A DNA stretch of 61,790 nucleotides, the filler included, from Dugesia japonica (lineage: Eukaryota): NCBI GenBank assembly GCA_001938525.1. It is 6 parts of 6 records of this genome, joined end to end, with 100 filler letters (N's around TTAATTAATTAA, not from the genome) between each part and the next. Parts side by side here need not be neighbours in the genome. Positions count along the whole stretch, not along the records: positions 21,148 to 33,754 come from MQRL01543369.1; 5 more parts are not named here. One strand, written 5' to 3'. Shown here piece after piece: positions 24,631-33,754 of the stretch; position 1 is the stretch's first letter; every line of letters begins with the position of its first letter. The notes under the pieces were generated by a model, which worked only from the letters and a program-made list of their open reading frames with translations, was not told the DNA's origin and searched no databases. A program made the translations under genes and the position numbers.

Positions 24631-25986
24631 ATGTCCTCTAAAAAGTTTATCTGTGATTATTGTGGTAAAATATTATTAAAAAAAAATAAATCTCGACATT
24701 TAGATTTATGTATTAACAAAGCACACAAAAAACCACAAGGGCAACAAGGGGGAGATTTACAAAATTCAAGTGTAATATCTAAATTATTAAAACCAATAAC
24801 TACAGAGAAATATCCAGGTGAACGTCATTTATTCCGTCATAATTACACTGGCCCTGGCACTAGATTAGATATCCGACTTGAAGAAGATGCCGAAGGAAAT
24901 TTAGTTCCACGTGAAGGTGAAGAACCTATTAATCAAGTTGATGCAGCTGCATTAAAACATGACATCTCCTATAATTCAGAAGATATCCGTGATCGCCATA
25001 TTGCAGATGTAAATTTAATACATGATCTTAATAATATTGAAAATCCTAGTCTCCAAGAGAAATTTCAGAGAGCCCTTGTAAAATTGGCTATGAAAGGTAA
25101 GATAATGATAGGCCAGGGTCAGAAAAACCACAAGGCCAACAAAAAAGCATTAAGAAAAACTATAATTAAGAAAGAAGAATCTGATGATGAAATTGATCCA
25201 GGAGAAATTAAAAGTAAAGAACTACATAAAGAATATAGAAAACCTAAACATTTTAGAAAAGTCATTGTTCATCATAAAGATGACATTTGGTCAGCCGATC
25301 TCATCTTCCAAGGCACAGAACGTAAAGGAAAACATGTAATTTTAACAGTTATAGATCTTTATACGCGATTCGCATTCATCGAACTCTCTAATAATAAAAC
25401 TGGTCCTAAAGTAACAGAAGCGTTTAAAAGAATCCTTGATAAAAGTTCTAGAACCCCAAAGAAATTATGGGTTGATGAAGGTAAAGAATTTTATAATTCA
25501 ACTTTTAAATCTTTCTGTAAAAATAATAATATTGAAATCTATTCAACTCAAAATCAAGGTAAAGCAGTCGTTATCGAACGTTTCAACCGAACTTTTAAAA
25601 ATAGGCTTTTTAAACATTTTACTTTTTCTGGATCTCAAGATGTAGATTCAGAATTATTAGATAAAATAGTTAATAATTACAATAATCATATACATTCAAG
25701 TATTAACATAACACCTCAAGAAGCAACAATAAATCCAGAAAATATAGAAATCCAAGCACCAAAACCATACACTGAAAAAGTTAAATTTAGAATTGGAGAT
25801 CGCGTAAGAATAATTAAAATTGGAAAAACATTTCCAAAAGGCTACACTTATAAATGGTCAACAAAAGGTTATTTGATAACAAAAATATATCATTACTCGC
25901 CAATAACATATGAAATCTCAAATCTTAACGGTGAAAAGATACTTGGTAGATTCTATACTTCTGAACTTCAAAAAACAGAATTATAA
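24631..25986 (+). CDS. Fusion protein: Zn finger, parvovirus VP1-type phospholipase A2, retroviral-type (rve) integrase
   Basis: CDYC..H...C; HNYTGPG and DAAALKHDISY..RHIAD (PLA2); WSADL, WVDEGKEF, VIERFNRT (D223/D282/E316); C-terminal FRIGDRVRI..KGY..KWS..GRFY..ELQK typical of Maverick integrases. Confidence 0.93.
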   Translation: MSSKKFICDYCGKILLKKNKSRHLDLCINKAHKKPQGQQGGDLQNSSVISKLLKPITTEKYPGERHLFRHNYTGPGTRLDIRLEEDAEGNLVPREGEEPINQVDAAALKHDISYNSEDIRDRHIADVNLIHDLNNIENPSLQEKFQRALVKLAMKGKIMIGQGQKNHKANKKALRKTIIKKEESDDEIDPGEIKSKELHKEYRKPKHFRKVIVHHKDDIWSADLIFQGTERKGKHVILTVIDLYTRFAFIELSNNKTGPKVTEAFKRILDKSSRTPKKLWVDEGKEFYNSTFKSFCKNNNIEIYSTQNQGKAVVIERFNRTFKNRLFKHFTFSGSQDVDSELLDKIVNNYNNHIHSSINITPQEATINPENIEIQAPKPYTEKVKFRIGDRVRIIKIGKTFPKGYTYKWSTKGYLITKIYHYSPITYEISNLNGEKILGRFYTSELQKTEL

Positions 25987-26056
25987 GAAAGCAAACCCAT
26001 AAAGGCCATAAAGGCAGAAGGAGAAGACAGTGTTAGATTAAATTAAATAATATAAA

Positions 26057-26248
26057 ATGAAACAACTTCTGCGAACTAAACACTTCTTCTCCGAACTTGA
26101 AACTATAATTGAAACAATTGAACACTCTTCTGAACTTGAATTATATTATAAAATTTCAGATTTTCAACACTGCTTTATGCGAACTCAACCCGAACCCGAA
26201 CATGATGATATTTTAGATTTCGATGAAGATATTGGAAATGAGAATGAA
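26057..26248 (+). CDS. Acidic viral ORF (N-terminal part only; continues into a gap)
   Basis: MKQLLRTKHFFSELETII...HDDILDFDEDIGNENE, open until the Ns. Confidence 0.5.
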
Positions 26249-26556
26249 NNNNNNNNNNNNNNNNNNNNNNNNNNNNNNNNNNNNNNNNNNNNNNNNNNNN
26301 NNNNNNNNNNNNNNNNNNNNNNNNNNNNNNNNNNNNNNNNNNNNNNNNNNNNNNNNNNNNNNNNNNNNNNNNNNNNNNNNNNNNNNNNNNNNNNNNNNNN
26401 NNNNNNNNNNNNNNNNNNNNNNNNNNNNNNNNNNNNNNNNNNNNNNNNNNNNNNNNNNNNNNNNNNNNNNNNNNNNNNNNNNNNNNNNNNNNNNNNNNNN
26501 NNNNNNNNNNNNNNNNNNNNNNNNNNNNNNNNNNNNNNNNNNNNNNNNNNNNNNCT

Positions 26557-31057: not shown

Positions 31058-32344
31058 TTATTAAATATAAAATGTTAAATATAAAATTTATAATCGATAT
31101 TTTCTTAGATGTGCTAAAATTGTAATTGTTTCTTGGTTAAAGTCGATGGTGTTAAAGTTTTCATCTACAATGTTAAATTTAAAACCGTCNATGTAATCTG
31201 TGTTAATTTTAGAATAAATAGCTGGAGATGGACGTTCAACTATTTTATATCCAAATGGAACTGTATTTATTGGAAATGAATATAATAAATTAATATTTGT
31301 GGTGTCGCGATTGTTAGTGACATAATTACCTTTAACAATGTTACATGTTACATTTATCGCGTTAACATTTGAAATGTTAATTTTATTTTCAGAATAATAA
31401 TCTCCAGGTTCGTATTTTCCAGGTTTAAATCCGAGAATCGTATGTAAGAATGATTTAGAATCAAAAGTTATAGTGATTTTAGTTTTAATGTTACATTTAG
31501 ATGTTGCAGTGTCANNNNNNNNNNNNNNNNNNNNNNNNNNNNNNNNNNNNNNNNNNNNNNNNNNTGAATTTTATTATAAACTTTTACACTTGGGATTTCT
31601 TTTAAAGGTTTTAAACCAAAAGAATCAAAATAATAACCCTCGCCTTTTACATTGACATAATATGCAACCCAATGTGTTCCATTTTGATTTGAATTTTGAT
31701 AATTAAAAATGTAACATGTTTTCGCCCTTGTGGTTTTTTCAGTGTTGATATTAAATTTTTCATTTTTCATGTAAATTTCTAATGGCATTTTTAAAAAGTT
31801 AGCGATTGAATATAAATCAAAATTTGTTGTTGTGGAGATTCCAAATGTTTTTAGAAAATCTAATAAACTAAATTCAACCTGTGACATTTATTAAATATAA
31901 AATGTTAAATATAAAATTTATAATCGATATTTTCTTAGATGTGCTAAAATTTTAATTGTTTCTTGGTTAAAGTCGATGGTGTTAAAGTTTTCATCTACAA
32001 TGTTAAATTTAAAACCGTCGATGTAATCTGTGTTAATTTTAGAATAAATAGCTGGAGATGGACGTTCAACTATTTTATATCCAAATGGAACTGTATTTAT
32101 TGGAAATGAATATAATAAATTAATATTTGTGGTGTCGCGATTGTTAGTGACATAATTACCTTTAACAATGTTACATGTTACATTTATCGCGTTAACATTT
32201 GAAATGTTAATTTTATTTTCAGAATAATAATCTCCAGGTTCGTATTTTCCAGGTTTAAATCCGAGAATCGTATGTAAGAATGATTTAGAATCAAAAGTTA
32301 TAGTGATTTTAGTTTTAATGTTACATTTAGATGTTGCAGTGTCA
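30735..32344. repeat. 780-bp direct duplication (30735-31514 = 31565-32344) across a gap, probably an assembly/haplotype duplicate
   Basis: Constant 830-nt offset, near identity, both copies end at Ns. Confidence 0.85.
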
Positions 32345-32647
32345 NNNNNNNNNNNNNNNNNNNNNNNNNNNNNNNNNNNNNNNNNNNNNNNNNNGTTTAA
32401 TTTCTAGATATTTTTCTAATCTAGATGACATTTCTTTTACTTCATAAGATCCTGGTTCTAGTTCCTGTGGTTTATCTGTTTTATTGTCGATTTTAAATTT
32501 ATTATTCAAACTGGTAATATTAAAAATAATATTGTAACATGAAAAATATAACAATCCAAGTTCATATTCCGAATCTAATTTTATCGGATAATCTAGGTTA
32601 ATTTTTAAATCTTGTTCTGTTCCAACTATTAAGAATTGATGAGACAT
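31918..32647 (-). CDS. Minor capsid protein (penton, single jelly-roll, Polinton PX-like), spanning a gap; 3' part duplicated at 31088-31514
   Basis: PIKLDSEYELGL..YN.IFNIT; after the gap ILGF..INVTCNIVKGNY..LYSFP..PFGYKIVERP..IVDENFNTIDFNQETI.ILAHLRKYRL*. Confidence 0.9.
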
Positions 32648-32724
32648 GCTTTGTGCGTAGCGATTTGTTGCCTTTATGGTTTTTTTTACTCTTTTATTAA
32701 ATGTAAAATGTAGATTGTTGAGTG

Positions 32725-33754
32725 TTAATTTTTGAAATATTTAGTTTTATATTTTTTATAAATAATATCAGACAATAAACCTTTAGATTTTAATTGTTTA
32801 CATAGACTCTTGATTTCAGATGCGAGATTGTTATGTCCAGATTTTACAGCTGAAATTAGTAATGTTAACTTTTCAAATAATGCAATTGGATTCTTATCTT
32901 TATAACCTTGTGTTGCCCTTGTTGCCCTTGTGGTTGTTGCTTCCTTTATGGTTTTCTTGTGGTTTTTGTTGTTTTTATTATGGATCTTTCTTCCTTGTTG
33001 CCCTTGTGGTTTTTTATGGATCTTTCCACCTATTTTCTTTTTTATATTTCTTAAATAATTGCAATATGTATCATCTTCAGTTGCTTTTACCAATTCTAAA
33101 TATATTCCAATATATTTTTTTGTTTCTCCATTTGATTTTATATTTTGTTTATTTCCTAAAATTATATCTATTAAAACATCACTAAATGCATGAGCCTTTA
33201 TACCATCATGAAAATAACTAGAACCATCCCTTTTATAAAAATTATCTCATTATCATTTTTAGGAAATTTTATTGTCAAGAAATCTTTATTATTAACAGTT
33301 GTATAATAAATTTCTGGTGTTGTTAATTCTGTTAATGATTCTTTATTAATTATTAAATCTCCGCTTGCAACAATTGGTTGTATATTATCTTTCTTAAATA
33401 TTTCTAATATTTCTTGCCCTTGTGGTTTTTCTTCTCTTTCTACCCCTTGTTTTTTTATGGGTTTTTCTTTTTCTTCTTCTGTTTCATAATCAGATTTATT
33501 GCGATCTGGTTCAGATTCTGGTTCTAGTTTAGATGTTTTCTCGCTTGGTTTTTTAGGCTTATTTTTTCCAGGATCTACTTTTCTAAATTTACTTTTTAAT
33601 TTAGCAACATAATCACTATTAGTTGGTATAGGTGATATAAATTTTAAATAAGTCTCAATTTCTTCAGGTGCTTCTTTATTATCTGTATTTCCTAGGATCA
33701 TTCTAAATATTCCATCTCTGTATGGTATAATTTCAGATTTAAATAAAAAGTAAT
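32725..33754 (-). CDS. Conserved Polinton-type protein, probably one gene with frameshifts (track ORFs 33198-33701 and 32725-33093); 5' end cut by scaffold end
   Basis: C-terminal NPIALFEKLTLLISAVKSGHNNLASEIKSLCKQL resembles the Polinton DPxxLxxRLxLLxxxxxAGNxxxxxEI motif; the frame is open upstream of 33701 to the gap. Confidence 0.6.

What the first reader, a model, noticed from the sequence alone, without database searches (positions are those of the whole stretch)
24727..33425. Polar 10-mer CCAYAARGGC scattered through the virus, always on the sense strand, flipping at the convergence point
Seen: exact copies on + at 24733, 25997 and 26006; on - at 30642, 30651, 30894 (duplicate 31724), 32670, 32924, 33000 and 33416; variants at 25128 (+), 27435 (-) and 32942 (-). 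All point inward toward ~27200. They occur both between genes and inside unrelated genes in different frames (KPQGQQG, KTTRA, KTIKAIKA, NHKA), often as 9-nt tandem expansions that keep the frame. Two 23-nt perfect inverted matches link distant loci: 25997-26019 with 30638-30660, and 24727-24749 with 32993-33015. I saw no exact copy outside this scaffold by eye. Inference: a nucleic-acid-level signal rather than protein conservation. Candidates are a KOPS-like orienting or packaging signal for the FtsK-family ATPase, a core-protein or transcription-factor site, an mRNA element, or a tiny selfish in-frame repeat.
Basis: partly seen in the sequence, partly recalled or inferred. Interest (0 to 1): 0.88.

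Follow-up and report, generated by a model that had tools for sequence, protein, structure and literature searches.

The report
Polar sense-strand motif in Polinton-like element
A short G+C-rich DNA word in two linked versions is repeated about a dozen times in an A+T-rich virus-like element, always on the sense strand. It is probably a gene-control signal copied around the element, but a functionless copy-and-paste repeat is not excluded.

Summary
CCACAAGGGC and CCATAAAGGC together occur 11 times (10 after removing an assembly duplicate), against 0.005 expected. All copies are on the sense strand, and both 23-nt inverted matches are exact.

The piece is part of a Polinton/Maverick-like element. 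It has a double-jelly-roll capsid gene, a ZnF-PLA2-integrase, a packaging-type ATPase and an adenain-type protease.

The signal is in the nucleic acid, not the protein:
- Three reading frames are used.
- The codons are rare ones (GC3 0.52 versus 0.155 elsewhere).
- In the integrase and the protease the encoded peptides sit in variable or inserted loops.
- 95 related loci lack the motif.

New here: the two variable positions are perfectly linked. The T version lies 13-85 nt upstream of four gene starts, twice inside a shared 66-nt cassette. The C version lies only inside coding linkers.

The polarity cannot be separated from gene orientation. A-runs, which flank the motif, are 8-fold commoner on the sense strand.

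Best reading (0.4): a lineage-specific transcription-control cassette spread by short-patch copying. Main rival (0.3): neutral copy-paste. A KOPS-like packaging signal has no support.

The parts
24733..24742 (+). C-version copy. It lies in the linker between the zinc finger and the PLA2 domain, inside the exact 23-nt match 24727-24749.
25128..25137 (+). One-mismatch C-version copy in the linker between the PLA2 and integrase domains.
25997..26015 (+). Two overlapping T-version copies (9-nt tandem) in the 70-nt spacer, 42-60 nt upstream of the ATPase ATG.
25988..26053 (+). 66-nt cassette upstream of the ATPase gene, shared in inverted orientation with 30604-30669 (51 of 66 identical, 23-nt core perfect).
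27435..27465 (-). One-mismatch T-version copy (27435-27444) 13 nt upstream of the orf65 ATG, plus a degenerate C-like copy (27456-27465), in a 73-nt spacer.
30642..30660 (-). Two overlapping T-version copies, 75-93 nt upstream of the orf565 ATG and inside the inserted C-terminal loop of the protease.
30604..30669 (-). 66-nt cassette upstream of orf565, partner of 25988-26053.
30894..30903 (-). C-version copy in a variable loop of the protease, before the catalytic His.
31724..31733 (-). The same copy as 30894, seen again in a redundant assembly contig. It is not independent.
32670..32679 (-). T-version copy in a 77-nt spacer, 23 nt upstream of the ATG at 32647.
32905..33022 (-). Cluster inside the basic C-terminal part of the broken gene: C version at 32924 and 33000, T variant at 32942, degenerate copies at 32956 and 33013, and a 9-nt tandem at 32911-32931. 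Several frames are used.
33416..33425 (-). C-version copy in a low-complexity linker of orf167. A degenerate copy lies at 33454.
23081..24621 (+). Double-jelly-roll major capsid gene. It contains a 50-N placeholder with a 138-nt overlap duplicate and carries no motif copy.
24631..25986 (+). Zinc finger + PLA2-like + rve integrase gene (451 aa).
26057..27186 (+). Packaging-type ATPase gene, interrupted by the 306-N gap.
27225..27422 (-). orf65, a small charged protein.
27496..28809 (-). orf437 (contains a gap), a paralogue of part of orf565.
28870..30567 (-). orf565, a coiled-coil and repeat protein (contains a gap). Its start overlaps the protease stop.
30560..31057 (-). Adenain-type cysteine protease gene.
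31100..32647 (-). Gene of unknown family, split by two 50-N gaps and the redundant contig.
32725..33701 (-). One gene broken once by a frameshift: orf167 plus the basic C-terminal ORF. No relatives were found.

Best explanation
The motif is the conserved core of a short cis-acting cassette specific to this lineage, read in the sense direction.

T version (CCATAAAGGC): it sits at the head of four likely transcription units (ATPase; orf565 with orf437; the 32647 gene with the protease; orf65). It most likely acts in transcription control, as a promoter-proximal or factor-binding element. This is the way virophages and Polinton-like viruses carry short oriented promoter motifs.

Spread: the family grew by short-patch copying. 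This means 9-nt slippage, plus template switching or gene conversion seeded on the flanking A-runs. That process also lodged C-version copies (CCACAAGGGC) in frame, in insertion-tolerant linkers of three proteins.

Shown: the enrichment, the polarity, the nucleic-acid-level nature, the insertion status, the split of contexts between the two versions, and the shared cassette.

Inferred: the transcriptional role, the copying mechanism, and whether the coding copies are functional.
For: - Four of five T-version loci lie 13-85 nt upstream of the next gene's ATG. About 11% of the sequence is that close to a start, which gives about 6e-4 by my own binomial arithmetic, with a threshold chosen after the fact.
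- Three of the four spacers of 60 nt or more in the motif-bearing region carry the motif. The fourth T locus sits where the protease and orf565 overlap, so there is no spacer.
- The ATPase and orf565 share a 66-nt upstream cassette. Its 23-nt core is mismatch-free while the rest is 65% identical (P about 0.009). The C-version pair behaves the same way (P about 0.006).
- Version against context: 4/1 versus 0/6, Fisher 0.015 (my arithmetic).
- Relatives have their own oriented upstream motifs. L001 has an exact 10-mer 6-17 nt before at least five ATGs. L094 and L095 have A+T-rich motifs next to the ATG.
- In a published Polinton-like virophage, only five of ten strong promoter-motif matches lay upstream of start codons (bioRxiv 10.1101/2022.07.28.501842).
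- The motif is unstructured in RNA folds, which fits a binding site.
- Nucleic-acid-level nature.
Against: - Only 4 of 11 gene starts have the motif.
- Its distance to the ATG varies from 13 to 85 nt, unlike the fixed, A+T-rich, ATG-adjacent motifs of relatives.
- All six C-version loci are inside coding sequence with no start codon nearby.
- Spacers and linkers are also simply the places where insertions are tolerated.
- The T version carries a stop codon in one frame, which alone pushes it toward spacers.
- No transcript data, no close relative (best 54% protein identity) and no host genome were available.
- Sense polarity is expected from A-run microhomology and strand composition.
Confidence: 0.4

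Rival explanations
1. A neutral or selfish copy-and-paste repeat with no function. A slippage-prone G+C-rich seed flanked by A-runs is copied to other A-runs by template switching or short-patch conversion. It survives only where insertions are tolerated, that is in spacers and disordered linkers. Sense polarity follows because A-runs are on the sense strand and because antisense copies would encode hydrophobic residues.
For: - A-runs of 6 or more are 8-fold commoner on the sense strand, and nearly every copy follows an A-run.
- The element has other in-frame tandem expansions: 12 nt in the capsid gene and 33 nt in orf565.
- A homologue carries a different tandem expansion in the same linker.
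- There is a gradient from perfect to degenerate copies.
- Copies are insertions in variable loops.
- The motif is absent from relatives.
- Perfect linkage of the two variable positions fits two master copies being pasted.
Against: - The 23-nt cores are mismatch-free inside more diverged cassettes. That suggests either constraint or very recent conversion.
- The T version is concentrated just upstream of gene starts.
- Rare codons have persisted in all coding copies.
- No comparable dispersed short motif appears in 55 related loci of 3 kb or more.
Confidence: 0.3
2. An RNA-level element in sense transcripts. It would be an unstructured A-rich site that recruits a protein or pairs with a cellular RNA, helping to express downstream reading frames from multi-gene transcripts.
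For: - All copies are transcribed in sense orientation if genes are read as annotated.
- Spacers are tiny (9-77 nt).
- The protease stop and the orf565 start overlap by 8 nt, with the tandem T copies 75-93 nt upstream.
- There is no local secondary structure.
- The two variable positions are a pyrimidine and a purine, so both versions could pair with one partner through G-U wobble (inference from the sequence).
Against: - No partner RNA is known.
- Rfam finds nothing.
- Wobble would allow all four combinations, yet only two occur.
- The coding copies are far from any start.
- The transcript structure is unknown.
Confidence: 0.12
3. A polar DNA signal read by a virion or packaging protein. Examples are a KOPS-like guide for the FtsK/HerA-type ATPase, packaging repeats, or binding sites for a core protein.
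For: - The motif is strictly polar and converges next to the end of the ATPase gene.
- A dense cluster lies in the gene for a very basic protein.
Against: - Polarity is fully confounded with gene orientation.
- Packaging a linear genome from one end predicts one orientation, not a flip.
- No sequence-reading domain is detected in the visible ATPase part.
- There are no copies in the leftmost 3.6 kb, and the copies are not clustered at an end.
Confidence: 0.05
4. Protein-level selection: convergent low-complexity basic peptides.
For: Three copies encode the same five residues in one frame.
Against: - All three frames are used, including within one ORF.
- Four loci are non-coding.
- The codons are rare ones.
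- Codon shuffles give 0.047 against 8 observed.
Confidence: 0.02

Closest known systems
Oriented promoter motifs of virophages and Polinton-like viruses, borrowed from a helper giant virus
   Same: A short word in sense orientation, recurring upstream of several genes of a small, densely packed dsDNA element. In the published PgVV-14T case only half of the strong matches are upstream of start codons. Relatives fetched here show such motifs.
   Different: - This motif is G+C-rich, at a variable distance from the ATG, and precedes only 4 of 11 gene starts.
- It comes in two linked versions.
- Half of its copies lie in frame inside proteins.
- No helper virus or matching host promoter is known.
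KOPS and other architecture-imparting polar sequences of bacterial chromosomes
   Same: A short polar word whose orientation switches at one point. The element encodes an ATPase of the same broad superfamily.
   Different: - The switch coincides with the switch in gene orientation.
- Copies are few and clustered.
- No sequence-reading domain is seen.
- The packaging geometry does not call for convergence.
Small mobile insertions that land in frame inside genes of A+T-rich genomes (Rickettsia palindromic elements, mitochondrial G+C clusters)
   Same: G+C-rich islands in an A+T-rich genome, present both between genes and in frame in tolerant protein loops, and absent from homologues.
   Different: This motif is only 10-25 nt long, is not palindromic, forms no hairpin and is strictly polar.
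Repeated regulatory cassettes at gene boundaries of phages that also serve as recombination points (recalled from memory, not tested)
   Same: The same upstream cassette heads unrelated genes. The inverted pairs could support exchange or inversion while keeping each gene behind its cassette.
   Different: The shared stretch is only 23-66 nt, and no alternative arrangement has been observed.

Membership tests
Polinton/Maverick-like (adintovirus/PLV-type) element: context of the motif | Double-jelly-roll major capsid protein | tested here: met
   PF21738 scores 32 bits (cut-off 27) on the C-terminal piece, with a weaker hit on the N-terminal piece.
Polinton/Maverick-like (adintovirus/PLV-type) element: context of the motif | Adenain-type cysteine protease and retroviral-type integrase | tested here: met
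   PF00770 scores 25.8 bits (cut-off 21.3). A profile of 17 homologues hits adenovirus proteinase structures at E 1.5e-4. rve scores 40.2 bits (cut-off 32.6).
Polinton/Maverick-like (adintovirus/PLV-type) element: context of the motif | FtsK/HerA-type (A32-like) packaging ATPase | tested here: inconclusive
   There is only a weak AAA_10 hit (E 0.011). The P-loop region lies in the 306-N gap. The gene is syntenic with weak or faint Pox_A32 genes in relatives.
Polinton/Maverick-like (adintovirus/PLV-type) element: context of the motif | Protein-primed family B polymerase and terminal inverted repeats | tested here: inconclusive
   No polymerase is present in the piece, which is cut at 33754. Only one probable end is present, with a hairpin and tandem arrays at 21216-21435.
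KOPS-like orienting sequences | Polarity follows replication or translocation geometry independently of gene orientation | tested here: inconclusive
   All + genes are on the left and all - genes on the right. The motif orientation and gene orientation switch in the same interval, 26016-27434.
KOPS-like orienting sequences | The translocase has a sequence-reading (gamma-type) domain | tested here: not met
   No such Pfam domain is found in the visible ATPase parts. Part of the gene is hidden in a gap.
KOPS-like orienting sequences | Copies spread along the whole replicon | tested here: not met
   There is no copy in 21148-24732. Five motif-like sites lie within about 110 nt at 32905-33022.
Virophage/PLV-type promoter motif | Sense-oriented and within about 150 nt upstream of start codons | tested here: inconclusive
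   T version: 4 of 5 loci are upstream of a start. C version: 0 of 6.
Virophage/PLV-type promoter motif | Matches the promoter of a helper virus or host gene class | not testable with these tools
   The host and any helper are unknown. There are no exact matches in IMG/VR or in the literature library.
Adenovirus-type packaging repeats | Cluster of repeats next to one genome end | tested here: not met
   The copies span 24733-33425. The probable left end has different repeats.
In-frame mobile mini-insertions (RPE / G+C-cluster type) | Insertion relative to homologues, tolerated in frame | tested here: met
   The integrase linkers and two protease loops show this.
In-frame mobile mini-insertions (RPE / G+C-cluster type) | Palindromic or hairpin-forming unit | tested here: not met
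   Fold z-scores run from -1.6 to +1.4, and no stem involves the motif beyond 2-3 bp.
Microsatellite-type slippage | Head-to-tail copies of the unit | tested here: met
   9-nt units are present at 2.1-2.3 copies at three loci. This does not explain the dispersed single copies.

The most novel reading that the evidence does not exclude
All copies, including those lying in frame inside the integrase, protease and basic-protein genes, are working sites of one sequence-specific reader. The element would then carry a genome-wide polar signal written through both spacers and coding linkers. No such arrangement has been described for Polinton-like viruses.
Probability: 0.15. Interest if true: 0.8.

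Novelty: new variant of a known kind. Interest (0 to 1): 0.45.

Why it matters
How Polinton/Maverick-like elements and their virus relatives control their genes is largely unknown outside the virophages. A lineage-specific, strictly oriented word that marks the heads of several gene groups would be a concrete handle on their transcription units. It would also point to whatever factor reads it.

The same word sits in frame in protein linkers. This shows how short nucleic-acid elements can shape viral proteins. It is also a caution that 'polar' motifs in compact genomes with convergent gene blocks can arise from strand composition alone.

Tried and rejected
**Searches for the source or close relatives**
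- Exact look-ups of three window proteins found no source contig.
- The best relatives are 54% (integrase) and 51% (protease) identical, so no close copy could be compared.
- Cluster look-up gave no organism names.
- Exact searches of IMG/VR for the tandem T core and the extended C core found nothing.
- 95 related loci were fetched. The 93 scanned (525 kb) show no enrichment of the motif. No comparable dispersed short motif appears in the loci of 3 kb or more.

**Other negative results**
- orf167 has no relative among 1.84 billion representatives, and the basic ORF has none either. The insertion test was therefore possible for only two proteins.
- Rfam and tRNA scans were empty.
- Local RNA folds are not better than shuffles.
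- A literature search for the four 10-mers found no paper.
- Pfam gave nothing for the 31100-32647 gene, so I do not call it a penton protein.
- The tandem array in L001 upstream of its integrase is a local array, not an analogue.

**Rejected readings**
- Protein-level selection, frameshift site, hairpin element, packaging repeats.

- None was entered into a tool or used as evidence.
- One search printed raw three-frame translations of the broken gene's region.

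
Full report
**What the piece is**

Places 21148-33754 are A+T-rich (25% G+C). They encode, on the + strand:
- an unknown 236-aa protein;
- a double-jelly-roll capsid protein (PF21738);
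- a 451-aa protein joining a zinc finger, a parvovirus-type PLA2-like domain (PF08398) and an rve integrase;
- an ATPase.

The - strand converges on these. It encodes orf65, two paralogous coiled-coil proteins, an adenain-type protease (PF00770; structures of adenovirus proteinase at E 1.5e-4 with a family profile), a gene of unknown family, and a gene broken by one frameshift.

This is the gene set of a Polinton/Maverick-like element. PLA2-like genes in such elements are known (PMC3671162, PMC8502044, PMC4642659). No polymerase lies in the piece, which is cut at its right edge. The left edge shows a simple repeat, a strong hairpin and tandem arrays, which is probably a terminus. The host is unknown.

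**Gaps first**

- Three of the four 50-N placeholders border a stretch that repeats sequence from a few hundred nt upstream:
  - 23728-23865 repeats 23540-23677.
  - 22954-23075 repeats 22657-22778.
  - 31565-32344, a whole 780-nt contig, repeats 30735-31514 with one mismatch. The copy at 31724 is therefore the copy at 30894 seen twice.
- The sized gaps in orf437 and orf565 keep the frame at nominal length.
- The two ATPase halves are in different frames at nominal length, so continuity there is unknown.
- No motif copy touches a gap.

**The observation**

All listed positions are right. The '10-mer' is two words, CCACAAGGGC and CCATAAAGGC. Positions 4 and 7 are perfectly linked. Every one of the 13 matches to the 9-nt frame with free positions 4 and 7 has C..G or T..A, and the degenerate copies follow the same rule. 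In relatives all four combinations occur.

With duplicates masked there are 10 sense and 0 antisense 10-mers, against 0.005 in dinucleotide shuffles. There are 8 coding 9-mers against 0.047 in codon shuffles. It is by far the most over-represented word in the piece. Both 23-nt inverted matches are exact, and the 9-nt tandems are real.

**Nucleic acid, not protein**

- The copies use all three frames, several within one ORF.
- Their codons are rare ones here: GGG is 4% of Gly, AGG 6% of Arg, AAG 11% of Lys and GCC 10% of Ala. GC3 is 0.52 inside the motif against 0.155 outside.
- In an alignment with 19 integrase relatives, both motif peptides lie in the two hypervariable linkers. One is between the zinc finger and an invariant Gly/Asp junction. 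The other is between the PLA2 and integrase domains.
- In an alignment with 16 protease relatives, one peptide lies in a variable loop. The other is an insertion absent from most homologues.
- The other motif-bearing gene has no relatives at all.
- 93 of the 95 related loci fetched (525 kb) hold 11 matches to the 9-mer on both strands, about 50-fold fewer per kb. No exact copy of the extended cores exists in IMG/VR.

**What is new**

The two versions live in different places.
- T version: four of five loci lie 13-85 nt upstream of the ATG of the next gene (ATPase, orf565, the 32647 gene, orf65). They occupy three of the four spacers of 60 nt or more in that region. The fourth locus is the protease tail, where the next gene overlaps.
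- C version: all six loci are inside coding linkers.
- The upstream regions of the ATPase and orf565 share 66 nt (51 identical). The C-version pair shares 42 nt (34 identical). In both, the 23-nt core is free of mismatches while the rest has diverged (P about 0.009 and 0.006 for random placement of mismatches). This points to constraint on the core, or to very recent short-patch conversion.

**Polarity**

The orientation switches somewhere in 26016-27434. Gene orientation switches at 27186/27225. No gene runs against its arm, so 'toward 27200' and 'sense strand' cannot be told apart here.
- Composition alone favours the sense orientation 2-4 fold.
- A-runs of 6 or more, which precede nearly every copy, are 8-fold commoner on the sense strand.
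- Against a 50:50 insertion model, nine independent loci all in sense give 0.002. Against composition they give only about 0.1 (my arithmetic).

**Mechanism**

I commit, at 0.4, to a lineage-specific transcription-control cassette. Its T-version core heads four likely transcription units. It has been multiplied by slippage and A-run-seeded short-patch copying, and the C-version copies are members of the family lodged where proteins tolerate insertions.

Relatives support the general idea. L001 has an exact 10-mer 6-17 nt before at least five ATGs. L094 and L095 have A+T-rich words next to the ATG. In a characterised Polinton-like virophage, half of the strong promoter-motif matches are not upstream of genes.

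Against it:
- the variable distance to the ATG;
- the G+C-rich nature of the motif;
- coverage of only 4 of 11 gene starts;
- the fact that spacers and linkers are also just the tolerant places.

The neutral copy-paste model (0.3) explains the polarity, the linkage of the two variable positions and the degenerate copies. It explains the perfect cores and the upstream concentration less well. An RNA-level role (0.12) fits the tiny spacers, the stop/start overlap at 30560-30567 and the lack of structure, but has no partner. A KOPS-like, packaging or core-protein signal (0.05) has nothing in its favour beyond polarity.

**Verdict**

This is a real, strongly non-random, lineage-specific sense-strand motif family. 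Its nature as a nucleic-acid element is established, and its function is inferred. It is a new variant of a known kind (oriented regulatory words of small eukaryotic dsDNA elements). The unusual twist is that in-frame coding copies and two linked versions exist.

These are declared under Tried and rejected.

Noticed in passing
window 21148-21435: Probable left terminus of the element. It has a (TAA)n-like simple repeat, then a G+C-rich hairpin at 21216-21282 (DNA fold -21 kcal/mol, z -5.9), then tandem arrays of 22-, 21- and 15-nt units.
   Followed up: partly
window 31565-32344, 23728-23865, 22954-23075: Redundant assembly pieces next to 50-N placeholders. They repeat 30735-31514, 23540-23677 and 22657-22778 with 1, 1 and 0 mismatches. 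These are unmerged overlaps or a second allele or copy, not real tandem duplications.
   Followed up: yes
window 24631-25986: The zinc finger + PLA2-like + integrase fusion is conserved in more than 100 metagenome proteins. The two domain junctions carry invariant or near-invariant glycines next to the hypervariable linkers. This would suit cleavage by the element's adenain-type protease (inference only).
   Followed up: partly
window 24167-24237 and 30308-30397: Other in-frame tandem expansions are present: 12-nt units in a capsid-protein loop and 33-nt units (2.7 copies) in orf565. The element is generally prone to slippage.
   Followed up: partly
window 30560-30567: The protease stop codon and the orf565 start codon overlap by 8 nt, an arrangement typical of coupled translation.
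   Followed up: no
window 32725-33701: One gene is broken by a single frameshift. Neither half has any detectable relative, even among 1.84 billion representative proteins. Its C-terminal part is very basic and holds the densest motif cluster.
   Followed up: partly
L001 3859, 6379, 9151 and near-copies at 7711 and 8641; L094; L095: Relatives carry their own lineage-specific upstream words. L001 has an exact 10-mer 6-17 nt before at least five ATGs. L094 has a (TA)n run 5-12 nt before most ATGs. L095 has TTAAAA directly before the ATG.
   Followed up: partly
protein P0005 (alignment A1, columns about 50-100): A homologue has a long tandem expansion of a six-residue unit in the same zinc-finger/PLA2 linker that holds the motif here. 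This linker is a recurrent site of repeat growth.
   Followed up: no
window 21391-21420 and 31401-31430: A 10-nt word of the left terminal array recurs twice inside the 31100-32647 gene, on the + strand (antisense there). This may be chance.
   Followed up: no
window 24727-24749/32993-33015 and 25997-26019/30638-30660: The two exact inverted pairs are nested and do not cross. In a single-stranded form of the genome they could pair at the same time, or they could support an inversion that keeps each gene behind its cassette. There is no evidence for either.
   Followed up: no
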